From: Piromyces finnis finn
Taxonomy: Eukaryota > Fungi > Neocallimastigomycota
NCBI GenBank assembly: GCA_002104945.1
Contig: MCFH01000025.1
Location: forward strand, 434,001-498,000
Direction of reading: 5' to 3'
DNA: 64,000 nucleotides
The notes under the pieces are model-generated. The model saw only the letters and a program-made list of their open reading frames with translations. It made no database searches and was not told where the DNA came from. Shown in pieces: positions 1 to 55,356 of the stretch. Each line of letters opens with the position of its first letter. Positions within the stretch are counted from its first letter, which is position 1. Position numbers and translations under genes: made by a program.

Positions 1-929
1 CGTCTCAATGCCCCATCCCACTGGATGTTAGATAAACTTACTGGTACTTGGGTATATATTGATGATGGATGAACAATCCTATAAAATATAATGTTAAGCT
101 TTAAAGAGAAATAAATTATTAATATTTACAAATAAATAATAGGCTCCAAAACCAAGTGCTGGTCCACACAAGACTCGTGAATGTTTACCACTTATGGTTT
201 TCATTCGTAACAGATTAAAGTATGCTTTAACTAAGAAGGAAGTTGTCAGCATCCTCATGCAACGTCTTGTTAAGGTCGATGGTAAGGTCAGAACTGATGC
301 TACCTACCCAGCCGGTTTCATGGGTAAGAATTAATAAATCATTATAATTATTAAGAAAGTATAGAAATTACGAAATAAAATAAACTAATATAAAAACCAT
401 TAATTTTATAGATGTCATCACTATCGAAAAGACTGGTGAAAACTTCCGTCTTCTTTTCGATACCAAGGGTCGTTTCACTATCCACAGAATTACCGCTGAA
501 GAAGCTAAGTACAAGCTCTGCAAGGTCAAGAAGGTTCAACTCGGTGCTAAGGGTGTTCCATACATGGTTACCCACGATGGTCGTACCATCCGTTACCCAG
601 ATCCTTTAATCAAGGTTAACGATACTGTCAAGCTCGATCTTGAAACCGGTAAGGCTGCTGAATTCATTAAGTTCGAAGCTGGTAACCTTTGCTGTATCAC
701 TGGTGGACACAACGTCGGTCGTGTTGGTGTTATCACTCACCGTGAACGTCACCAAGGTGGTTTCGATATCATCCACGTTAAGGATTCCCTTGAACGTACT
801 TTCGCCACCCGTTCCTCCAACGTTTTCGTTATCGGTAACGGTAACCAAACCTGGATTTCTCTTCCAAAGGGTAAGGGTGTCAAGTTAACCATTACTGAAG
901 AAAGAGACCGCAGAAGACAACAAGCCTAA
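1..929 (+). CDS. RPS4: 40S ribosomal protein S4 (5'-partial; exons <1-51, 143-323, 412-929)
   Basis: Spliced translation reads [34 protein letters not shown]...[28 protein letters not shown]...[12 protein letters not shown]...[21 protein letters not shown]; both introns GT-AG. Confidence 0.98.
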
Positions 930-1462
930 ATGTAAAAATTAATTTTTAAATAAAATTTTACAAAATAAATGATGGTTTTATAAAAAAATTATCGGTCAAT
1001 ACTTTTTTTGTTGAATTGAAATTAATTATTTATATAAATTAGAAATAATTCGAAAACAAACAATCTTTATATTATAATAAAGCAATTATAGAATCAATTT
1101 TTTTTGAAATCGGAGAAGTTATTTGAATATTTTTTTTGAAGGAGTAAAAATACAATAATGGTCAAAATTAGTAAAAAAAAAGAGGATGTTGAGTTCGAAT
1201 TGTGGAAATTATAAAAATTAGCATATTGAGGATTATCATAAATAATTTATATATATATAATATTTGTAGCGAGGATATAAATAGTATTTTTTAATATAAT
1301 CATAGTTTAAATCGAAGTAAAATTGTATTTTAATTAAAGGATGTTTCTTTGTATTTATTTTAAGAAATAAATGTGTAGTAAAGTATCTTGATAATAATTT
1401 TAAATTTGTAATAAAGGTTTTAAAGTATTTATTGCAGTTAAAAAAAAGTAATTAAAATAGAT

Positions 1463-1477
1463 TTAAAAGTAGTATAA
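1463..1477 (+). repeat. Target-site duplication 1, left copy (TTAAAAGTAGTATAA); right copy 7268-7282
   Basis: Exact 15-nt direct repeat; the right copy follows a 32-nt poly(A) directly. Confidence 0.85.
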
Positions 1478-1487
1478 TAATAAAGTT

Positions 1488-1499
1488 TAAAATATTTGA
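1488..1499 (+). repeat. Target-site duplication 2, left copy (TAAAATATTTGA); right copy 7217-7228
   Basis: Exact 12-nt direct repeat bracketing the full-length LINE; the right copy follows a 35-nt poly(A). The sequence belongs to the element's own 3' terminus. Confidence 0.8.
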
Positions 1500-1747
1500 C
1501 CCTCTTGGGAACGTGCCTTCATTTATTTAATAAATGTAGTTTCTCAAGGGGGTCTACTCATGCTCATGGTACTGAGAGAGTAGAAAGAATTAAATCCAAG
1601 TATTGCGCAATGGATGCTTGGTGCCCTCTTAGGAATGTGCCTTCATTTATTTAATAAATGTAATTTCTCAAGGGGGTCTACTCATGCTCATGGTACTGAG
1701 AGAGTAGAAAGAATTAAATCCAAGCATTGCGCAATGGATGCTTGGTT
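1500..1747 (+). repeat. Two tandem 124-nt units at the LINE 5' end
   Basis: Units start at 1500 (CCCTCTTGGGAAC) and 1624 (CCCTCTTAGGAAT); four substitutions over the aligned length. A third copy of GCTCATGGTACTGAG lies at 1777-1791. Confidence 0.95.
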
Positions 1748-2391
1748 AGTCTTCAAGGGAAAATTATTAGGACTAAGCTCATGGTACTGAGCGATTAAAA
1801 AACATTTTATTCATCAAATTTAAGTATTTGATGAATAAGTGAATGTTTGATTTTTCAGGTAAGTTTGTATAGTATTTAATTAGAAGAGTAATACATTTTG
1901 TTGCTGTATTTTTTCTTTTATTCATGTATTCATGTAGTACTACTCTTCTCTTGTAAGAATCCAATGTAGTCAACTTTAGCATTTGCATTGTACTTTTATA
2001 TTCATGTAGCTATTGTTGTATTGTTTCTTGTAAGAGACTGATTCACTCTACATCATGTAAAAATACTATTCACAAGCTTTCTGGTGTCGACATTCTTGAT
2101 TCAAATTTTTTACCAATTTAAATATTTAATGAAAAGTAAAGTCAAACAAGTTTAGTGTCAAAAAGCGAATCGAATTTACTAACAACAAACCAAAACTAGA
2201 ATTTTTAAAGAAAATTTACAACTAGAATTCAAAAAAAAAGAAACTTTAAACAAAGCATCGTAACAATTTTTGTACTATCCAGTACTTTTAAGAAGAGAGA
2301 GAGAGACAGATTTTTTTCCATATACGTTATATTTGTAATTTTTATTAGTATTTATTTTATATTCAATATTTTTTAATTAGAATTAATTATC

Positions 2392-5300
2392 ATGTCAGTC
2401 CTTTATATTAAAGATAAGAATTATATCAGACGTGGTACCCGGTCTTATGGTATCCCCTTAGATGATATTCGCTCCTTCTTTATCCGTGGTATTCGATCAT
2501 GGTCAGTAAATATGCTATGGGAAAAACTCGAGGTTATTCTAGAAGATAAATTTAATTCAGTTATTAGTGTTAAATATTTTCAAACTTTCAATGATCACTT
2601 TTTCTTAGTCAAGGTTCATGGTTCATCAAAAGATTGTATTAAAATCTTACACATGTTAAAGAAGAAACTTTCAGTTACCTCAATTTCCTTTTCAGCTCGT
2701 AGTAGAAGGAATCACAAATACACTTTTTCCACTCTCAAACGTAAAATTTTAGTTTCTAATAAATATCAACATTCTATTCAACAATCATTTCAACAATCAG
2801 TTCAACAATCAGTTCAACAATCTCATCAACAATCCGATCTTCAACAAGATCTTCAACAGGATCTTCAACAAGTTTCCCATCATGAAAATATTCCAGATCT
2901 ACAGCAAACACAATTTCAATCTCAACATTCAACAATTAATTCTAATAGTTCTATCAACTCTGATAACAGTTCAATAGTTGATAGTTCTTCAGTTTCACAG
3001 CCATCTAGTAATAGTTCTACTTATTCCTCTGATGCATCATCCATTAATAACGATGACTTTAATAATAATAATAATAGCAACGATTCTTCCTCATACAACA
3101 AGCCTGATAACTTTTCTTTTTGTCTTAGTTGGAACACCAATGGGTGGAATCATGAAAAGAGAGATAGTATTAGCTATTTCACAGCTATTTTCAAACCATT
3201 ATTCTTATGTTTCCAAGAAACTGGTAATGGTTCTAGATTGAATACAGATTATCCTTGTCGTGTTACTTTGCGAAACTATAGACACTTTTTCAAGAAAGCT
3301 GACGAATCAGTTCCGGGAATGAGAGGTTTATATTTAGGTTTTCACAATTCGTGTCAAGCCTCACTTGAAAACTTCTCTGGAAAGTATATTATTTCTATTT
3401 ATACTTTTAGTCTCTGGAATAGATTCAAATGCTCGATTGGAAATGTTTATATGCCTCATAGTCATCACAACATCTATGTTGATCATGCAAAGTTAGAAGT
3501 TCGCTTGTGGTTACAAACTCATTCATCCCATCCATCGATTCTTGTTGGTGATTTTAATATGTCTAAAGTAAAATTATCCAACTGGTTATCAACTAATGGA
3601 TTAGGAGATTGGGAAATTCTTCCGCTTAGAGGGTCTACTATCTCTTGGACTCGAGGTGATCAATCTTCCGACATTGACCATGCTCTTATCAATTCGAAGA
3701 TGAAAGATCTTATTCACTCAGGATCATTTATAAATAATTTTTATCCTGTATCAGACCATAAGCCACTTCTTATTAATGGTAAAATTATTCCTATGGATGA
3801 TTTTTCTAATGACTTTAATGTTCCTAAGAAAATTCTGAAATGGAATAGATTAAAATGTATTGAGGAAAAGGAATCTATTCTCAGTCATAATAAATTCCAA
3901 ATACTTTCAGCAAAATCCAGCGATCCTAATGTTTCTACAGATGAACTTTCCAAAGAGTTTACTTCAACTGCTTTTTCAATTGCAGACGAGCTCAGTATTA
4001 CTTCAGCAAATAATGTTATAAAGTCTTCATTTCATATTTCACAACAAATTTTTAATCTTCAAAAAATCAAAATGAAGTTGTATAAGAGATTTAAAAAAGA
4101 AAGAATTTATGATATAGATGAATTTATTAAAAGAATTAAAATCTACCGTAAACTCATTGATTACATCCACAAAAGATGTAATGAATTTAGGAAGCAAGAA
4201 TATCTTCATTGGATTAAAACAGGATGTGAGTATATGAAGAGTCATAATCCTAAGAAGGCCTGGAAATGGATCAAGAAAACTGCAAAAATTGGAAAAGATT
4301 CCTTCTTTATTGCTCAACCAATTAAAAATAAAAATGGAGAATTAGTTGTTGCTACGGAAGAACAACTAGATGTGTGGCATGATCATTTCGAAAAGCTTGC
4401 ATCAGATCCAAGTGGTGTAAGTCTTGATTTGGAGCATTGGTATGAAGAACCAACGAATAAACGTTTTTCACTTCCTATGCTTGATGAGTGGGATATCAAC
4501 CAAGATATTAGTATTGATGAAGTCAAGTCAGCTATCCTCACTACTCCAAATTATAAAGCATCAGGTCCGGATGGTATTCCAATTGAATTTTACAAAGCAT
4601 TAGTTCCATCAAGTAATGATTCTAATAATGCTACAGATAATAATTCTTCTGGTAATACTACTTCAGATAATGATGCTCATGGTTTAAATTTTATTCTTAA
4701 ATTATTCAACCGTATTTGGGATGGAGATTTCCCCAACTCATGGAATGAATCCAGTATTGTTTCTATTCCTAAGAAGGGAGATTTGACAGATTGTGATAAC
4801 TATCGAGGTATATCACTTATCAATAATGGTATTAAGTTGATTTCCAAAATTGTCACCACTAGAATCTCAGAATATGGTTTAAAGAATAATTTCATTAGAC
4901 CTGAACAATTTGGTTTTCGAAAAAAGGAAGAAAGTATTAGTCTTTTCATTTCAATCCAAGAAATATGCCGTAGACGTCAATTAGATAATAAAGAGACATA
5001 TTTGGCCTTTTTAGATCTCAGGAAAGCATACGATTCAGTCCCAATCGGTAATATTCTCCATAAATTAGATTGTTTAGGAATCCGAGGTAAGAGTCTACAA
5101 TTTATCAAAAATTTATATTTAACATCTAAGGCTAATGTCAAATTAGATGGACAATTCTCGAAATCTTTTGATGTGAAGAAAGGAGTCCGTCAAGGTTGCC
5201 CACTTTCGCCTATTCTTTTTAATCTCTTTATTAATGATATATTTAAAGAGTGTGAAGATCTCGGAGTCAGTTTAGGTGACACTCGATGCTGTGGTGGACT

Positions 5301-6942
5301 TTTTGCAGATGATATAGTTATTTGTGCTCCAACAAGAGGATGCTTAAAAAAGATGCTTAGAAGAGTTAATGAATGGGCCTTGTATAATGAAATGGAATTT
5401 GGTATCCAGAAATGTTCAACGATGGTGATTCGTCCTGAATCAATAGAAAATCAGAACAAGAGAGATCCAACATTTTACTTAGCAGGACAACCCATTCCAA
5501 CTACTGACTGCTACACTTATCTTGGTGTTCCATTTGATAAGAATCTGTCCCTTAAACCAGTAATTAAAGCTCTTAATAACAAGGTTTTGAAAGGGCTTTT
5601 CTCAGTCAGTAAATTCTTAAGAAATCCTAATATTCCTATTCCTTTCAAAAAACTAGTACTTAACTCTCAAGTGATTAGCAGAGTTTCATACTTTGCACCA
5701 TTACTTGGATCCAACAAAGCTAGGTCTAGGATTGCTCAGAAGCATGTTAACAAAGGAATACGATGGGTTGCCGGAGTTCATAAAGCTGTATCGTTTATAT
5801 CTTTATACTCTATTTCAAAAGATTTGAATATTCCTCCATTGTCAGCCAAATGTGCGTTAGCTCAGGTTAGATGTTTTAACAAATGGAAAAACTCAAATTG
5901 TATTATCTCACACCTTGTCAATTACATTCCTAAATTTAGAAAATACACGTGGTGCAAATCAAGTAGGACACTTGATAAAAAACTAAAGAAACATGGAGAT
6001 GTTAAAGCAGTTAAAAACTTTTATTGGAAAGATCTCAAAGGGAATTCAATCAAAGCGCAATATTATGATGATAATAAATTTATTGAAACTAAAGATTTTA
6101 TTAAATTATGTTATGAATACCCAGAGTTTGCCTATGGCTTCTACTGGCTATTGAAAGCAAGAAGCGGATACAAGTTGGATGCTAGAGTTGCCAAAGCTGC
6201 TAAATTTGTTGATCCAATTTGTCCTAACTACTGTCCATGTTGCAAGTGTGGTGTTCAAAGTATTAAACATTGGTTATTAGATTGTCCAACATTTAGAGAT
6301 ATCCGTATTAAACATTATGATTCCATAGTCCAGCTATTAAATTTTTTCAGTCAACGTAATTCCAATAGTCCTATCAATAATAATGAAATTGATAATGTCA
6401 GTAGAGATAGCAATAACAGTAATAGTAATAGTAACAATAATAATAATAACAATAGTAATAATAACAATAGTAGTAATAGTAATAATAGAAATAGTAATAA
6501 TAACAATAGTAGTAATAGAAATAATAATATTAATAATGATAGCAATAGTGAAGATAATAATTCTAATTTAGATAGTAATTTAGTTAATGATAGTAATAGT
6601 TCTAATAATCCGGTGAATATTAATGTGTATGATTATTCTAGTGTGTGCAGTAAAATATTTAAATTCCTTCTTGGGGGAAGAAGTTTTAACAATATTAATT
6701 ACAATTCAAGGGAATGGAAAGAACTTTGTAAGCGTCAGATTCAATCTGGTACTAATGAAGGAGCACCATTCTTGACGGTAACCGCGGAACTTCTAACCAA
6801 AATCATGCCTTTTGCTATTGGCCAGCAATGGTCAATGTTCAAAAGGTTTGAAGCAACATCCAAGAGCGTCAATGCTGAAGAAACAGTAAGACAGGCCAGG
6901 AGGGCCAGCGCAACCAATGGAGATCATAATTTTGTCCCATGA
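2392..6942 (+). CDS. LINE polyprotein: AP-like endonuclease + reverse transcriptase + C-terminal CCHC zinc knuckle
   Basis: APE motifs SWNTNG, CFQET, VGDFN, IDH, SDHKP. RT motifs ASGPDGIP, YRGISL, QFGFR, FLDLRKAYDSV, GVRQGCPLSPILFNLFI, LFADD, YLG. Knuckle CPCCKCGVQSIKHWLLDCP. No stops or frameshifts. Confidence 0.97.
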   Translation: MSVLYIKDKNYIRRGTRSYGIPLDDIRSFFIRGIRSWSVNMLWEKLEVILEDKFNSVISVKYFQTFNDHFFLVKVHGSSKDCIKILHMLKKKLSVTSISFSARSRRNHKYTFSTLKRKILVSNKYQHSIQQSFQQSVQQSVQQSHQQSDLQQDLQQDLQQVSHHENIPDLQQTQFQSQHSTINSNSSINSDNSSIVDSSSVSQPSSNSSTYSSDASSINNDDFNNNNNSNDSSSYNKPDNFSFCLSWNTNGWNHEKRDSISYFTAIFKPLFLCFQETGNGSRLNTDYPCRVTLRNYRHFFKKADESVPGMRGLYLGFHNSCQASLENFSGKYIISIYTFSLWNRFKCSIGNVYMPHSHHNIYVDHAKLEVRLWLQTHSSHPSILVGDFNMSKVKLSNWLSTNGLGDWEILPLRGSTISWTRGDQSSDIDHALINSKMKDLIHSGSFINNFYPVSDHKPLLINGKIIPMDDFSNDFNVPKKILKWNRLKCIEEKESILSHNKFQILSAKSSDPNVSTDELSKEFTSTAFSIADELSITSANNVIKSSFHISQQIFNLQKIKMKLYKRFKKERIYDIDEFIKRIKIYRKLIDYIHKRCNEFRKQEYLHWIKTGCEYMKSHNPKKAWKWIKKTAKIGKDSFFIAQPIKNKNGELVVATEEQLDVWHDHFEKLASDPSGVSLDLEHWYEEPTNKRFSLPMLDEWDINQDISIDEVKSAILTTPNYKASGPDGIPIEFYKALVPSSNDSNNATDNNSSGNTTSDNDAHGLNFILKLFNRIWDGDFPNSWNESSIVSIPKKGDLTDCDNYRGISLINNGIKLISKIVTTRISEYGLKNNFIRPEQFGFRKKEESISLFISIQEICRRRQLDNKETYLAFLDLRKAYDSVPIGNILHKLDCLGIRGKSLQFIKNLYLTSKANVKLDGQFSKSFDVKKGVRQGCPLSPILFNLFINDIFKECEDLGVSLGDTRCCGGLFADDIVICAPTRGCLKKMLRRVNEWALYNEMEFGIQKCSTMVIRPESIENQNKRDPTFYLAGQPIPTTDCYTYLGVPFDKNLSLKPVIKALNNKVLKGLFSVSKFLRNPNIPIPFKKLVLNSQVISRVSYFAPLLGSNKARSRIAQKHVNKGIRWVAGVHKAVSFISLYSISKDLNIPPLSAKCALAQVRCFNKWKNSNCIISHLVNYIPKFRKYTWCKSSRTLDKKLKKHGDVKAVKNFYWKDLKGNSIKAQYYDDNKFIETKDFIKLCYEYPEFAYGFYWLLKARSGYKLDARVAKAAKFVDPICPNYCPCCKCGVQSIKHWLLDCPTFRDIRIKHYDSIVQLLNFFSQRNSNSPINNNEIDNVSRDSNNSNSNSNNNNNNNSNNNNSSNSNNRNSNNNNSSNRNNNINNDSNSEDNNSNLDSNLVNDSNSSNNPVNINVYDYSSVCSKIFKFLLGGRSFNNINYNSREWKELCKRQIQSGTNEGAPFLTVTAELLTKIMPFAIGQQWSMFKRFEATSKSVNAEETVRQARRASATNGDHNFVP

Positions 6943-7178
6943 TAAAATTTTGATCTTTGGCTCGGTGTCCCATTGGAAGTCAAATACAATTATTATACTT
7001 TAGTATGATAGTGGCTTTCTTACTTTAATTAAAATTACTAGAATACATTATACCCAGTTTTTATTCATTTGTGTTTATTTAAACATATTTTTTTTATTTT
7101 TATTTTTATTTTTAATTTTTTATTACATGTATTATAATTTTAATTAAATTAATAATAAAGTTTAAAATATTTGATGCC

Positions 7179-7218
<40 letters not shown>

Positions 7219-7228
7219 AAATATTTGA

Positions 7229-7232
7229 TGCC

Positions 7233-7267
<35 letters not shown>
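7229..7267 (+). mobile_element. Right half of an ultra-short 5'-truncated copy of the same LINE (TGCCGTT-A32); left half at 1478-1499
   Basis: Joining 1478-1499 to 7229-7267 restores TAATAAAGTTTAAAATATTTGATGCCGTT(A)n, identical to the element's last 29 nt, enclosed by TSD1. Confidence 0.75.
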
Positions 7268-7269
<2 letters not shown>

Positions 7270-7375
7270 AAAAGTAGTATAACTAAAGTTTAGTGTTGTT
7301 ATTTATCTTTATCGGGAAATAATATTTTAATATTTTAGGCATTAAGTCAAGGAAAATGATTAATTTAATAGTATT

Positions 7376-8105
7376 AGGATTGCTCAGAAGCATGTTACCA
7401 AAGTTATATGATGGGTTGCTGGAGTTCATAAAGCTGTATTTCTTTCAAAAAGCTAGTACTTTTTTTTTTTTAAGATAGATAATAATTCTAATTTAGATAG
7501 TAATTTAGTTAATGATAGTAATAGTTCTAATAATCCGGTGAATATTAATGTATATGATTATTCTAGTGTGCAGTAAAATGTTTAAATTCCTTCTTGGGGA
7601 AGAAGTTTTAGCAATATTAATTACAATTCAAGGGAATGGAAAGAACTTTGCAAGTGTCAGATTCAATCTGGCACTAACAAAGGAATACCATTCTTGACGG
7701 TAACAGCGGAACTTCTAACCAAAATCATGCCTTTTGCTATTAGCCAGCAATGGTCAATGTTCAAAAGGTTTGAATCAAGCAACATCCAAGAGCGTCAATG
7801 CTGAAGAAACAGTAAGACAGGCCAGGAGGACCAGCGCAACCAATGGAGATCATAATTTTGTTCCATGACAAAATTTTGATCTTTGGCTCGGTGTCCCATT
7901 GGAAGTCAAATACAATTATTATACTTTAGTATGATAGTGGCTTTCTTACTTTAATTAAAATTACTAGAATACATTATACCCAATTTTTATTCATTTGTGT
8001 TTATTTAAACATATTTTTTTTATTATTATTTTTATTTTTTAATTTTTTATTACATGTATTATAATTTTAATTAAATTAATAATAAAGTTTATAATATTTG
8101 ATGCC

Positions 8106-50659: not shown

Positions 50660-53600
50660 TTACTTCTTTTTTCCTTTCTTTCCTTTGGCATCTTTTCCTT
50701 TACCGTCTTTCTTATTTTTTGGATCTTCATCACTTTCAGTAAAGAATGCTATTCTTTTCTTTTGAATTGGTAGTTTATCAAAGAAATTCTATATTTTAAC
50801 GTAGTTTTTTTAGATAGATTTAAATTTTATAAATTATTTATTTTTATTCGTATATGAAAATTACTATTTATTATCAATATTGCTATACTTTATAAAGTTT
50901 ATCATCTTCTTTATTTATTGGTATCATTTCTGCTAGTTGCATTATAAATTCATTTGTATCTAAGGGCTTCATTTTATTCTTTTGATATTCATACATAAAT
51001 ATATATTGAATTAACCAATAAATATGTATTTAATTTAAAATGATTAAAAATTATTATAATTAATTAGATTAAATAATTACTGTAGTTATTCTTTTTTCTG
51101 TGATAACTCTTTCACATAAAGCTTTGATAGCACCTGCTGGGAATTTATCTGTTAATTTTGTTAATAAACTTAAATTAACAAATCTAAAGGTACTCCAGTC
51201 GCCTCCATAATATTTTATATAATGTTTCCATAGTAAATATCTTGTATTATAATCTGGTTTTGGTATCATAATACTTTTCTTGAATAAAGATAACAAACCC
51301 TTGGTATCACAATGTATATATAATTAATTAAAGCTAATAACTTAATAACTCATATATTATTTTACGAAATAAAATAAAAGTAATAATATAAATGGTATAT
51401 ATATATAATTTATAAAGGATATCCCAAGGTTTATGTGATGTTCCAATTAATAAAATTTTTCCTTTTAATTTTTTTGCATATTTAATTAATCCTTTTTTAA
51501 TTCTTTTTGGATCAGATGGATTATCTTTTGGTACCTTTTTTGCAAATACCATTTCTGCTTCATTTATACATATTATAGCAGGTTGACATGCCTCAGCAAC
51601 TTTAAATACCATATGTAACATTTTTGCAACTCCAGCTTTTCCTGGATATTGTCCCATTGTATTTCTTGGTGATAAATTAAAAACTGTAGCAGATGTTTCT
51701 GTAGCAATTGCATTAACATATGCATTTTTACCCACACCTTTTGGACCAAAGAGTAAAACAGAATTAATTTTTGGGATTGCATCACTTACAGAATCGAATC
51801 CCAATGGTAAAATACAATATTCTGTTAATATCTAAACATAATGAATTAATCAAACTTTATTATTATTGTGTCGTTTTTAAGAAGATTTTATTATTAAAGT
51901 AAAATTTACCTGATGTAAATCTAATAAACATGGTTCTACTATTTGCTTATCCATTGTATTTTCTAATATATTATAATCGCATACAAAATCCTTCAAATGT
52001 AATTCAACAGGCTATTGTAAATATATTTAAATTGATATTTGAATATTAAATAATGCATATTTAGTATTAATTTTTTTTATATTCATTATTAATTATATAT
52101 GATAATAATACAGATTGGATAATTCCAGCTTGAACCAATTCTTCATATAATGATTCAATTGTTCTACCGGCTGTTAAATCTTTTTCCTTCTTTTTTCCTT
52201 TCTGTTATTTTTTTTATTATAAATATTATATTATATTTAATTACTATATAATAATTATATATATTTTTCACAAATTTCAATATACAGACCTTTCCTTTTT
52301 TACCTTTTTTGCCCTTTTTACCTAATTAATTTATAGGAATTTAAAAAAAGTATTTATACTAAATAAAAATAAAACATACATATTAAATATTATGATAAAA
52401 AGTTACACATTTATTTTACCTTTCTTTCCCTTCTTCTTTTTTCCTTTACCACTTTCCAATGCAAGTTTTAAATTCTTTAATTCCTCTTTTAATATTTCAA
52501 CTACTCTAACTTTAATCTTAGTAATACATATAAATATTGTTAAATATTCTATTTTTTTTCAATATATATAAGAAAACTATAATAATATTTATTTTTGCAT
52601 TACTTCTGATTCAACTTCTTTTCTTTTGTCATTTTTAATAATTTCACTATCATGTTTTTGTTCAAAGTTATTTTTTTCATTTTTATTTTTCCAATCTTGT
52701 TCATATATTTCACAACTTGTATAATTTATATGGTAAAATATATTGATAATTATATATAATAAAGTAAATATTTATGGAATTATTATAATTTACATATATT
52801 GATATTGAAAATTTTATGATAATATTCTATTATTATACCCCGTTTTAATTAATGGTATATATTTTGAATTTTTATCAGTTTTCCATTCTTCTGGATCGAC
52901 TTCTTCCTATAATTTCCCATTAAATATATCATTGATATTTGTTTATTATTAAATTTATTTAAAATCAATATATATAATATGAAAATATATAAAAAAAATT
53001 ATTCCTATTGATATATATTTGAATTTACTTCTGCTTTTTTCCCTTTTTTAGTTTTTTTTGCCCCTGCTGCTTTTTTTGAATCTCCTTGTTCATTTCCTGT
53101 TGAATCAGTACCTCCTGATTGTCCCGCTTCGGATTTGTCTACAGATGTTTCACTTTTCTTTATATCAGCAGTAGATGGGGCTGTAGTACCATCGACTTTA
53201 CCTTCGCTATCACCATTTTTCTTTTTTCCTCCTCCTTTTCCCTTTTTCCCTTTATCATTTTCTTCTGTAGCACTCTCTGTTTCTGGAACTACAATAGTTT
53301 CATTAAACTTATAATCTGGTTGCTGCCAAGTTTTATCAGCAGGAAATTCTGGGAATGTATATAATTATGAAATATAATAAAATATAATAAATTGAAAATA
53401 AAAAAGATATTTTGAAATATAATTTTATTTTTTGTTAAGGTAAAAAAACAAACAAACAAACAAACATAGAATTATATATTATATTATATTTTATATAATG
53501 TTTTTTCATGAATAAAAAGGATATTTTCCAAATACTCTTTTATATTCCATATACCATTGACGGAAATTATCTTGAAATGTTTCTTTCATATCTGAGCCTT

Positions 53601-55356
53601 CAACCTTTTTAATTCTAAAATTAAATAGTAAAATATTTATTATTATCAAATTCTTTTTTTTTTCTATATTTCAAATAATATGAAAATTATAGGAATGAAT
53701 TCACTAACTTTTCTTTAATATCTATTAATGCTTGTTGATAATCTTCTTCATATTGTTTTTGAAGAATCTTTCTCCTTTCTCTATTTTTTTGATCTTTTAT
53801 TATTGGATTTTCATCATTATTTTTTGAATTAAAAGGCATCATTGCTATATATATGTAAAAATTTATAATGATGATTAATGATTATTAAAGATGTTTATTC
53901 TCATTAAAATTCTATAAAAAGTATATATTATTTTTATTAATATATTAATATTTATTTACATAAAAATTGATGGTCCTTGCGTTTAACATTATAATAATTA
54001 TTTCTTCCTAAATATCCTTTATATCTGTTATTATCAAAAATATGTAATATAGAAAAATTTTAAATATATAATTATTATATTAATATATACATTCATGCAT
54101 ATTTATATATTCATATGTTTTAATATATAATTTAAATAAATAGCTATTTATTTACATTTTTTGAATTTTTAGTGCTGCTTCTCCAACATCCATTTCATCC
54201 ATATTATTTTCCATTTCTTCTTCTCTTTTTGCTTGTTTTCTTTATTAATATTAAAAATTATATATTTAATGATATATATAATAACATTTTATTTAAATAT
54301 AAATACTAATGAGGATTACTTTAAATCATCCATGTATTTTGCTCTAATGTATCCTTGTCTTCCTCTTTCATTAATTTGTAATATTTTAATTGCATCAATT
54401 AATGATAAATCCATAAAATATTGTGTACTTTTATCGATATCTAAAGATTTTGCATTACATGCGGTCTATTATAATATAATTATTTAATTTTAATATTTTA
54501 CTTTATCTTTTCGTATATATAATATATAGAAAGTAAAAATATATTTCAATTTTTATATATATATATATACAATTTTATTTACATACTAAAATTGATTTAT
54601 TAATTTCTAATTGTTTTTCTCTATCTTCCAAAAAAAATTTAGGTACTGGGATTATGAGATCTTCTGGAATAAGTTTTAAATCTAATAATATATCACTTAA
54701 AACAAAAAAATCCGAACTTTCCAATTCAACCATTTTCTTTTAAAATTTTAGTTAAATATAAAGTTAATATATAAAAGAGAATCAATTATTAATTCTAGAA
54801 ATTGTTTATATTCATATATAAATTCAATATATTACATGTTTTGCTTCAAGTAATCTACCAATTACGGCTAATAAAATTTCTCTTATTACTCTACGTTTTT
54901 GTGGTTGTAATATTTGGTCATAGGTTTGCTATAAAGATCGTTGATTAAAAAAAAAAAAGATATATATTAATTAATAATTAATATATTATAAATATAATTT
55001 TTTTATATATTATCATTATTTATATGAATGAATGAATGAGATGTGTAATGTATATTTCATAATTAGTATTTTGATAATAACCTCGATTTTTTTATATATT
55101 TGTATATATTTAACATAAATTGTTGCTATATGTTGAAAAGAACTGGCCTTATCTTTAGGCATTAAAGCGGTATCTTGGGGACTTTCATATTCCAATTGTT
55201 GTCGGAGGTCATCATTAACCTCATTCCAATATCTAATATATGTACTTTTGGCCACAATATAAATTATAATTGAAAAGTGTATATTTAGAATTAATAATTT
55301 TTTTTGTTAATATATATATATATAAATATTAATATTCTATCATACGCGTTTGACAT
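50660..55356 (-). CDS. IQCA1: IQ and AAA domain-containing protein 1 (dynein regulatory complex subunit DRC11)
   Basis: MSNATYIRYW, FQHIATIYVKYIQIY, YDQILQPQKRRVI, NERGRQG, IQ motif KIQKIYKGYLGR, FRQWY..FGKFPEFP, AAA core GPKGVGK...KYPGKAG...IPKPDY; two of its introns are AT-AC. Confidence 0.93.
51314..51422 (-). other. U12-type AT-AC intron in IQCA1 (109 nt)
   Basis: 5' end ATATCCTTTA, 3' end TATATAC; removal gives KPW-D-CDTKGLLSLFKKSIMIPKPDY with no indel against the IQCA1 family. Confidence 0.88.
53357..53524 (-). other. U12-type AT-AC intron in IQCA1 (168 nt)
   Basis: 5' end ATATCCTTTT, internal ACCTTAAC, 3' end TATATAC; removal gives RVFG-K-FPEFP. Confidence 0.9.

What the first reader, a model, noticed from the sequence alone, without database searches (positions are those of the whole stretch)
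53357..53524. AT-AC minor-spliceosome intron with a far-upstream U12 branch point in the flagellar gene IQCA1
Seen: on the minus strand the coding frame ...AGA GTA TTT GGA AA is followed by ATATCCTTTT, a perfect match to the U12 5' splice consensus RTATCCTTT. Coding resumes after ...TATATAC with A TTC CCA GAA TTT CCT. No GT-AG solution keeps the conserved FG-x-FPE motif. A canonical U12 branch sequence CCTTAAC lies at 53440-53434, so the branch A is about 78 nt from the 3' splice site. Established: U12 branch points normally sit about 10-20 nt from the acceptor, and budding yeast and most Dikarya have lost the minor spliceosome. Inference: this fungus keeps a working U11/U12/U4atac/U6atac system, possibly with relaxed branch-to-acceptor geometry. 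GT-AG-only gene predictors would mis-model this gene.
Basis: partly seen in the sequence, partly recalled or inferred. Interest (0 to 1): 0.8.

Follow-up and report, generated by a model that had tools for sequence, protein, structure and literature searches.

The report
Minor-spliceosome intron with distant branch site
A flagellar gene (DRC11/IQCA1) of a very AT-rich gut fungus carries a genuine AT-AC intron of the rare minor-spliceosome type; minor splicing is already published for this fungus, but the branch signal lies 78 bases from the intron's end instead of the usual 10-20, and it stays equally distant in three related species.

Summary
On the minus strand an exon ends at 53525, the intron runs ATATCCTTTT (53524) to TATATAC (53357), and CCTTAAC lies at 53440-53434, 78 nt from the acceptor.

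The junction is well supported. Orthologues are colinear across GK|FPEFP. Three spliced transcript contigs from related fungi break exactly there. One of them matches its own species' genomic contig, so exact AT-AC removal is shown for the orthologous intron. Every in-frame GT/GC-AG alternative deletes at least 15 conserved codons.

The same gene holds a second AT-AC intron (51422-51314). The genome has U12 and U6atac matches above Rfam's thresholds, and U11 and U4atac matches just below. Minor splicing in Piromyces finnis and its relatives is already published (Larue & Roy 2023), so that inference is right but not new.

The distant branch site is the interesting part. The orthologous intron in three relatives keeps one [A/T]C[C/T]TTAAC motif 55, 68 and 113 nt from the acceptor, inside otherwise diverged AT-rich sequence. 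Of 27 frame-supported U12-type introns sampled in this genome, 15 have spacings of 24-84 nt.

Earlier notes of this scan report the same on other DNA of this genome. No lariat data exist, so actual branch use remains inferred.

The parts
50660..55356 (-). DRC11/IQCA1 (dynein regulatory complex protein 11) gene. It has about 19 exons, the ATG at 55356-55354 and the stop at about 50662-50660.
   Evidence: The exon map comes from the transcript contigs L049 and L050 of relatives. The best named relatives are chytrid 'Dynein regulatory complex protein 11' at 47-49% identity, with Pfam DRC11_N and AAA. The AAA domain was found. The tiny first exon and its GT-AG intron were read.
53525..53614 (-). 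Exon upstream of the intron (...KVEGSDMKETFQDNFRQWYMEYKRVFG + AA of the Lys codon).
   Evidence: tblastn of orthologues and blastn of the transcripts L047, L049 and L050.
53357..53524 (-). Intron A: a 168-nt AT-AC intron of U12 type, in phase 2 (AA|A). It is the longest intron of the gene.
   Evidence: No in-frame GT/GC-AG alternative keeps the conserved block. Orthologous introns were found in L099, L101/L102 and L106. A cDNA-genome pair from the same species, L050 and L102, shows exact removal of the orthologue.
53516..53524 (-). U12-type 5' splice site ATATCCTTT.
   Evidence: It is identical (ATATCCTTTTT) in all three relatives.
53434..53441 (-). Branch-site motif ACCTTAAC. The presumed branch A is 53435, 78 nt from the 3' splice site.
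   Evidence: It is complementary to the intact GUAAGGA box of this genome's U12 snRNA. The orthologous motifs TCCTTAAC, TCTTTAAC and TCTTTAAC lie 55, 113 and 68 nt from the acceptor in relatives.
53359..53433 (-). A/T-only spacer between the branch motif and the acceptor, with no G and no AC or AG dinucleotide.
   Evidence: It has no significant secondary structure (z = -0.14).
53357..53358 (-). 3' splice-site dinucleotide AC.
53035..53356 (-). Exon downstream of the intron (A + FPEFPADKTWQQPDYKF..., then a Lys/Gly-rich low-complexity stretch). Its 3' boundary is approximate.
51314..51422 (-). Intron B: a second AT-AC U12-type intron of 109 nt in the AAA domain (PW G|AT CDTKG), with 5' splice site ATATCCTTT.
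   Evidence: The AAA Pfam match stops at profile position 111 of 131 exactly at this exon end. The orthologous 85-nt intron was found in L041-L046.
51327..51334 (-). Degenerate branch-site candidate of intron B, GCTTTAAT, 14 nt from the acceptor.
   Evidence: It aligns with TTCTTAAC, 14 nt from the acceptor, in the relative's intron. It scores 5.0, which is no better than the background of this AT-rich DNA.

Best explanation
The interval 53524-53357 (minus strand) is a real U12-type (minor-spliceosome) AT-AC intron in the DRC11/IQCA1 gene of an anaerobic gut fungus. From memory of the assembly size and contig number, the genome is probably Piromyces finnis. The likely mechanism, inferred by analogy with the canonical pathway, is as follows. 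The U11/U12 di-snRNP binds the 5' splice site ATATCCTTT and the internal ACCTTAAC together. The bulged A at 53435 attacks the 5' splice site. The second step then uses the AC at 53358-53357, 78 nt downstream, across an A/T-only spacer that offers no competing AC or AG. So the intron is canonical in its signals but lies far outside the usual 10-20 nt branch-to-acceptor spacing. This long spacing is a stable feature of the intron in at least four related species, and it is common among U12-type introns of this genome. What is shown: the exon junction, the signals, the snRNA genes, conservation of the distant motif, and the genome-wide spacing distribution. What is inferred: that the distant A is the nucleotide that actually branches, and that the minor spliceosome does the splicing.
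For: Junction:
- Full-length orthologues read ...YKR.nGKFP[DE]FP... without a gap across the junction.
- The transcript contigs L047, L049 and L050 of relatives (82-92% nt identity) break exactly at 53525|53356.
- L050 is 97-100% identical per exon to the genomic contig L102 and joins L102:2464|2673. That removes exactly ATATCC...CCAC.
- No in-frame GT/GC-AG pair keeps the conserved block.

Machinery:
- U12 scores 66.6 bits (gathering score 53), with an intact GUAAGGA box.
- U6atac scores 52.1 bits (gathering score 33), U11 38.2 (39) and U4atac 49.2 (53).
- Minor introns and snRNAs are published for P. finnis and N. californiae (PMC10639083).

Distant branch site:
- Each of four orthologous introns holds exactly one [A/T]C[C/T]TTAAC, at 78, 55, 113 and 68 nt from the acceptor. 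The surrounding intron sequence is diverged.
- By my rough composition estimate, such an 8-mer is expected in about 1% of introns of this size.
- In 27 ORF-supported U12-type introns of the genome the spacing is 11-20 nt in 12 and 24-84 nt in 15.
- The long spacers hold 9 AC/AG dinucleotides in 553 nt, against 94 in 2073 nt in the 5' parts of the same introns.
- The best branch-like match near the acceptor in the long-spacing introns is no better than in ordinary GT-AG introns (mean 4.2 against 4.4).
- No RNA structure shortens the distance.
Against: - There is no RNA from this genome itself and no lariat mapping, so use of the distant A is inferred.
- In human systems the branch-to-acceptor distance has an optimum of 11-13 nt and is considered constraining (review PMC3584512).
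- A weak alternative, TTCATAAT, lies 8 nt from the acceptor.
- In the relative L101/L102 an AC 35 nt after the motif is skipped, so a simple 'first AC after the branch' rule does not hold.
- The 3' splice sites of the genome-wide sample rest on open-reading-frame continuity, not on transcripts, and four of the long-spacing cases are ambiguous.
- The U6atac and U11 candidates lack the GG that normally pairs with the CC of the 5' splice site.
- The U11-59K (PDCD7) profile found nothing. That search is uninformative, because its controls were also blank.
Confidence: 0.75

Rival explanations
1. The intron is U12-type, but the lariat forms at a cryptic, degenerate branch site close to the acceptor (for example TTCATAAT, with its A 8 nt from 53357). 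The distant CCTTAAC would then serve only as a docking or enhancer element for U12, or be a relic.
For: Intron B of the same gene has no canonical motif and appears to use a degenerate GCTTTAAT 14 nt from its acceptor, aligned with TTCTTAAC in a relative. So degenerate sites are tolerated here. TTCATAAT scores 5.0 out of 7. The canonical distance rule comes from the review PMC3584512.
Against: TTCATAAT has an internal mismatch to U12, and at 8 nt it lies closer than any of the 12 canonical cases sampled (minimum 11). Near-acceptor scores of the long-spacing introns equal the background of GT-AG introns. No near-acceptor motif is conserved among the four orthologous introns, whereas the distant motif is.
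Confidence: 0.15
2. It is an AT-AC intron removed by the major (U2-type) spliceosome, and the U12-like motifs are chance matches in AT-rich DNA.
For: RTATCCTTT is frequent by chance here (3.65 expected per window). Rare U2-type AT-AC introns exist in other organisms (established knowledge).
Against: U2-type AT-AC introns carry U1/U6-type 5' sites, not ATATCCTTT (established knowledge). Here a perfect U12 5' site and a branch motif co-occur and are both conserved in four species. A second such intron lies in the same gene. The minor snRNAs are present.
Confidence: 0.03
3. It is not an intron in this genome: the gene is broken or the interval is retained, and the match to relatives' transcripts is irrelevant.
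For: No transcript of this genome itself was available.
Against: Both flanking exons are open and conserved, and all other introns have intact GT-AG signals. The splice signals are intact and identical to those of a relative in which removal is shown.
Confidence: 0.02

Closest known systems
Canonical U12-type AT-AC introns (minor spliceosome; U11, U12, U4atac, U6atac), including those already reported for Piromyces finnis and Neocallimastix californiae (Larue & Roy 2023, PMC10639083)
   Same: The 5' splice site is ATATCCTTT and the termini are AT-AC. The branch motif CCTTAAC is complementary to the U12 snRNA box GUAAGGA. All four minor snRNA genes are found in the genome, and both motifs are conserved among related species.
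   Different: The branch motif is 78 nt (55-113 nt in relatives) from the acceptor, against an optimum of 11-13 nt (PMC3584512). That is beyond the search window of 45 nt before the acceptor used by the standard classifier (bioRxiv 10.1101/2020.10.12.336362). The intron position is not shared with the chytrid, blastoclad, fluke or fish orthologues examined.
Distant branch points of U2-type introns with an AG-dinucleotide exclusion zone (from memory: Gooding et al. 2006, Genome Biology)
   Same: A branch site tens to hundreds of nt upstream is followed by a stretch depleted of potential acceptor dinucleotides. Here there is no AC or AG in the 75-nt spacer, and AC/AG is depleted in the long spacers genome-wide.
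   Different: That phenomenon belongs to the major spliceosome, which has polypyrimidine tracts and U2AF. Here the signals are U12-type, and one relative skips an intervening AC.
Transformed minor-splicing system of Physarum polycephalum (Larue, Elias & Roy; bioRxiv 10.1101/2020.10.12.336362)
   Same: It is a lineage in which a hallmark of U12-type introns has shifted.
   Different: In Physarum the branch motif itself changed (TTTGA) and co-evolved with U12 snRNA, and it stays 9-12 nt from the acceptor. Here the motif and the U12 box are canonical and the spacing is what has changed.

Membership tests
U12-type (minor-spliceosome) intron | Extended 5' splice site /RTATCCTT(T) | tested here: met
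   ATATCCTTT at 53524-53516. It is identical in three orthologous introns.
U12-type (minor-spliceosome) intron | Terminal dinucleotides AT-AC (or GT-AG) | tested here: met
   AT at 53524-53523 and AC at 53358-53357. The junction is fixed by transcripts of relatives and by orthologue colinearity.
U12-type (minor-spliceosome) intron | Branch-site sequence TCCTTAAC-like, complementary to U12 snRNA | tested here: met
   ACCTTAAC at 53441-53434. This genome's U12 keeps GUAAGGA. The motif is conserved in relatives.
U12-type (minor-spliceosome) intron | Branch site close to the acceptor (about 10-20 nt, optimum 11-13). This is a characteristic property rather than the defining signal. | tested here: not met
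   The spacing is 78 nt here and 55, 68 and 113 nt in relatives. The review value is from PMC3584512. For this reason I file the intron as a variant.
U12-type (minor-spliceosome) intron | The host genome encodes U11, U12, U4atac and U6atac | tested here: met
   U12 scores 66.6 bits and U6atac 52.1 bits, both above the gathering scores. U11 (38.2 against 39) and U4atac (49.2 against 53) are just below, with conserved Sm sites and loops.
U12-type (minor-spliceosome) intron | The host genome encodes minor-spliceosome-specific proteins (65K, 59K, 48K, 35K, 31K, 25K, 20K) | tested here: inconclusive
   The PDCD7 profile found nothing, but its controls were also blank. There is one zf-U11-48K-type CHHC finger at G000:C1:1441045-1441119, whose gene identity is unresolved.
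U12-type (minor-spliceosome) intron | Removal from mRNA at exactly these borders | tested here: met
   This is shown for the orthologous intron by the same-species pair L050 (cDNA) and L102 (genome). For this genome it is inferred from colinear transcripts of three relatives. No RNA of this genome itself was available.
U12-type (minor-spliceosome) intron | Splicing depends on U12/U6atac, and the lariat forms at the motif's A | not testable with these tools
   This needs lariat mapping and snRNA inactivation.
DRC11 / IQCA1 (dynein regulatory complex protein 11) | N-terminal DRC11_N region, IQ motif and C-terminal AAA ATPase domain, colinear with named orthologues | tested here: met
   The exons align end to end with chytrid DRC11 proteins. 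The relative's full-length transcript hits DRC11 of chytrids and animals at E down to 1e-244, with Pfam PF27107 and PF00004. The AAA domain was found.

The most novel reading that the evidence does not exclude
In anaerobic gut fungi (Neocallimastigomycota) the minor spliceosome has lost the strict branch-to-acceptor distance rule. U12 still recognises a canonical branch motif, but the acceptor can lie 25 to more than 100 nt downstream across A/T-only, often microsatellite-like, spacers. This geometry is evolutionarily stable (four species for this intron) and affects about half of the U12-type introns of the genome. It may be linked to the unusual U6atac (GCCG instead of AAGG before AGAGA) and U11 5' ends seen here. 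It would also mean that standard classifiers, which look only 45-55 nt upstream of the acceptor, undercount minor introns in these genomes.
Probability: 0.5. Interest if true: 0.7.

Novelty: new variant of a known kind. Interest (0 to 1): 0.55.

Why it matters
The short, fixed branch-to-acceptor distance is treated as a hallmark of U12-type introns. It is built into the tools that classify them and into models of how the minor spliceosome finds its 3' splice site. A lineage in which canonical U12 signals work, and are conserved, at 55-113 nt would be a natural experiment on 3' splice-site selection by the minor spliceosome. It would also imply undercounting of minor introns in AT-rich genomes, and it would explain broken gene models in anaerobic fungi.

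The intron itself, and the presence of minor splicing in this fungus, are not new (PMC10639083).

Tried and rejected
- **Joined model.** Exons were searched separately by reference, and the natural transcript contigs L047, L049 and L050 were used instead.
- **Failed searches for relatives.** The word search with the exon-9 reading frame found nothing.
- **Public gene models.** The full-length search listed no gene model of an anaerobic gut fungus. These are either withheld or fragmented, so the claim that predictors mis-model this gene could not be tested.
- **Other U6atac copies or a compensated 5' site.** I looked for another U6atac copy with the canonical AAGGAGAGA box and found none. I looked for a compensated ATATCGG 5' splice-site class and found only repeats and coding hits.
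- **Minor-spliceosome proteins.** The PDCD7 (U11-59K) profile gave no candidates, and the controls were blank too, so this is uninformative.
- **RNA structure.** Folding that might bring the branch motif near the acceptor was not significant.
- **GT-AG alternatives.** All were rejected.
- **Intron positions in other lineages.** The ctenophore and zebrafish loci were not on record. Neither position holds an intron in the orthologues of Spizellomyces, Batrachochytrium, Schistosoma or Clupea; for Blastocladiella I confirmed this only for the second intron's position.
- **Species identity.** A literature check of the assembly statistics found nothing. The species name therefore rests on my memory and on earlier scan notes.
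- **Doubtful genome-wide candidates.** L016, L017, L025, L055 and L060 were left out of the statistics.

Full report
**What is in the sequence.**
- Read on the minus strand, the frame ...AGA GTA TTT GGA AA ends at 53525 and is followed by ATATCCTTTT (53524-53515).
- The intron ends TATATAC at 53357, and coding resumes A TTC CCA GAA TTT CCT at 53356.
- CCTTAAC lies at 53440-53434, preceded by A. Its second A (53435) is 78 nt from the last intron base.
- The window is 14-33% G+C, mostly about 18%.
- The genome (G000) has 56.46 Mb in 232 contigs. From memory that fits the anaerobic gut fungus Piromyces finnis, and earlier notes of this scan use the same name. I could not confirm the name from a paper.
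- In such DNA the 5' motif alone proves little. RTATCCTTT occurs ten times in the window against 3.65 expected, and only two of the ten sites follow an open frame. Both of those are in this gene.

**The gene.**
- The largest exon has an AAA ATPase domain.
- Searching it against protein representatives gave full-length relatives.
- A full-length natural transcript of a relative (L050) hits 'Dynein regulatory complex protein 11' (DRC11/IQCA1) of chytrids at 47-49% identity, and also animal DRC11, all with Pfam DRC11_N and AAA.
- The gene runs from the ATG at 55356 to about 50660 on the minus strand and has about 19 exons.
- An 11-nt first coding exon is followed by a GT-AG intron at 55345-55245.
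- The mapped introns other than A and B are GT-AG and 78-153 nt long, apart from one uncertain GC-AG call, and a few were not resolved.

**The junction.** Exons were searched separately by reference, and natural transcripts were used for anything spanning a junction. Four lines of evidence fix the junction at 53525|53356.
1. Orthologues read ...QWYME[YF]KR.nGKFP[DE]FP... without any gap. tblastn places orthologue residues up to 312 on the upstream exon and from 313 on the downstream exon.
2. Three spliced contigs from JGI samples (L047, L049, L050; 82-92% nt identity to the exons here) align exon by exon and break exactly at 53525|53356.
3. L050 is 97-100% identical, exon by exon, to the genomic contig L102 and so comes from the same species. 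It joins L102:2464 to 2673, removing exactly ATATCC...CCAC, the orthologue of this intron.
4. All GT/GC donors and AG acceptors around the interval were enumerated. Each in-frame pair deletes at least 15 conserved codons.

**A second AT-AC intron.** Two kb downstream, the AAA exon ends ...CCT TGG G|ATATCCTTTAT (51422), and the next exon starts after TATATAC| with AT TGT GAT (51313).
- The product PWD-CDTKGLLSLFKKSIMIPKPD is colinear with orthologues and with the three transcripts.
- The Pfam AAA match stops at profile position 111 of 131 at this exon end.
- A relative's genomic contigs (L041-L046) have an 85-nt AT-AC intron at the same place, with TTCTTAAC 14 nt from the acceptor. Here the aligned sequence is GCTTTAAT, also at 14 nt.
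- So one gene holds one U12-type intron with a degenerate branch site at the normal distance and one with a canonical branch site at an abnormal distance.

**The machinery.** Rfam models find one copy each of four snRNAs in G000.

| snRNA | Score (bits) | Gathering score (bits) |
|---|---|---|
| U12 | 66.6 | 53 |
| U6atac | 52.1 | 33 |
| U11 | 38.2 | 39 |
| U4atac | 49.2 | 53 |

- U12 keeps the branch-site-pairing box GUAAGGA.
- Larue & Roy 2023 (PMC10639083) already state that Piromyces finnis and Neocallimastix californiae have minor introns and minor snRNAs. The inference that this fungus keeps a minor spliceosome is therefore right but published.
- The PDCD7 profile gave nothing, which is uninformative because the controls were blank.
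- One CHHC zinc finger of the U11-48K type was found, and its gene was not resolved.

**Is the distant branch motif functional?** A word search with the preceding exon led to genomic contigs of three related organisms. These span the orthologous intron. All four introns begin ATATCCTTTTT and end AC.

| Source | Intron length (nt) | Branch motif | Motif start from 5' end | Branch A to acceptor (nt) |
|---|---|---|---|---|
| Window | 168 | ACCTTAAC | 84 | 78 |
| L099 | 136 | TCCTTAAC | 75 | 55 |
| L101/L102 | 208 | TCTTTAAC | 89 | 113 |
| L106 | 141 | TCTTTAAC | 67 | 68 |

- Each intron contains exactly one [A/T]C[C/T]TTAAC, and the rest of the intron is poorly alignable.
- By my rough composition estimate, such an 8-mer is expected in about 1% of introns of this size. 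Its presence in all four argues for selection.
- No motif near the acceptor is conserved.
- In L101/L102 an AC 35 nt after the motif is not used, so acceptor choice is not simply 'first AC after the branch'.

**Genome-wide context.** Pattern searches of G000 for ATATCCTT(T) followed within 300 nt by TCCTTAAC or VCCTTAAC gave many intron-like hits. For 27 of them, open reading frames on both sides fix a frame-compatible AC or AG acceptor.
- The branch-A-to-acceptor distance is 11-20 nt in 12 of them.
- It is 24-84 nt in 15: 24, 28, 28, 29, 29, 33, 35, 41, 43, 45, 47, 62, 78 (this intron), 82 and 84.
- The long spacers are poly-T, (TA)n or similar.
- Long spacers hold 9 AC/AG dinucleotides in 553 nt, against 94 in 2073 nt in the 5' parts of the same introns. 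Eleven of the 15 have none.
- The best U12-pairing candidate 8-22 nt from the acceptor in the long-spacing set scores the same as in ordinary GT-AG introns of this gene (4.2 against 4.4).
- One long-spacing case lies in the TMEM231 orthologue. Its downstream exon starts at Pfam profile position 258.
- Caveats: these acceptors rest on reading frames, not transcripts; four cases are ambiguous; and the sample required a canonical motif somewhere in the intron.
- The review by Turunen et al. gives an optimum of 11-13 nt (PMC3584512). The standard classifier scans only 45 nt upstream of the acceptor.
- Folding shows no structure that would shorten the distance.

**Age of the two introns.** Neither position holds an intron in the orthologues of Spizellomyces punctatus, Batrachochytrium dendrobatidis, Schistosoma turkestanicum or Clupea harengus. 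For Blastocladiella emersonii only position B is clearly covered by a single exon; position A lies in a gapped alignment that I did not inspect.
- The two animals share a GT-AG intron five codons upstream of position A.
- Both AT-AC introns may therefore be specific to the gut-fungus lineage, or lost elsewhere. The sampling is too thin to decide.

**An unexplained side observation.** The only U6atac candidate reads GUAUGAGCCGAGAGA where the family consensus has GUAUGAAAGGAGAGA. The U11 candidate starts AAAAGAAAAG where the consensus has AAAAAGGG.
- Both lose the GG that pairs with the CC of ATATCC.
- No second U6atac copy and no compensating ATATCGG splice-site class was found.

**Verdict.**
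- The intron and the presence of minor splicing are ordinary for this fungus and already published.
- The distant, conserved branch motif and the broad spacing distribution are a variant I did not find described in the papers I could search.
- Earlier notes of this scan report the same feature in URB2, importin-9, NF-YB and another flagellar gene of this genome. These are AI notes, not independent evidence, but they agree with what I measured here.
- Actual branch use needs lariat mapping.

Noticed in passing
window 51314-51422 (minus): A second AT-AC U12-type intron lies in the same gene, inside the AAA domain. It has no canonical branch motif, only GCTTTAAT 14 nt from the acceptor, where a relative has TTCTTAAC at the same place.
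   Followed up: yes
L002:1501-1649 (G000:C112:211500-211648) and L003:1501-1615 (G000:C152:317514-317628): The only U6atac candidate has GCCG where the family consensus has AAGG just before AGAGA. The U11 candidate begins AAAAGAAAAG instead of AAAAAGGG. Both lose the GG that pairs with the CC of the 5' splice site. No other U6atac copy and no compensating 5' splice-site class was found.
   Followed up: partly
window 53357-53524 and 51314-51422; L051, L052, L096, L097, L098: Neither AT-AC intron position holds an intron in the DRC11 genes of two chytrids, a fluke or a herring; for the blastoclad only the second position was confirmed. The two animals share a GT-AG intron five codons upstream of the first position. 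These may be lineage-specific minor introns.
   Followed up: partly
G000, e.g. C2:567624-567911, C9:12142-12429, C13:984361-984648 (L066, L067, L070 and others): A dispersed repeat family with at least 28 near-identical copies begins ATATCCTTTCCATTTGATCAAG. It matched the U12 pattern by chance and is probably a transposable element.
   Followed up: no
L053 (G000:C167:1100598-1102307), intron at locus 910-720 (minus): This U12-type intron has a spacer between TCCTTAAC and the acceptor made of a (TA)n run and two poly-T runs, 82 nt in all. That suggests microsatellite expansion as the way the spacing grows.
   Followed up: partly
L024 (G000:C112:1385853-1388948), intron at locus 1596-1440 (minus): The TMEM231 orthologue, a ciliary transition-zone gene, also carries an AT-AC U12-type intron with the branch motif 62 nt from the acceptor.
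   Followed up: partly
L003:2162-2325 (minus): A SNORD14-like C/D box snoRNA match (52 bits, below the gathering score of 64) lies about 550 nt from the U11 candidate.
   Followed up: no
window 55245-55356 (minus): The gene starts with a tiny coding exon (ATG TCA AAC GC, 55356-55346) followed by a 101-nt GT-AG intron. A mechanical ORF list instead suggests a GTG start at 55255.
   Followed up: partly
window 1-8000: G+C is 28-33% here against about 14-26% (mostly near 18%) over the rest of the window.
   Followed up: no
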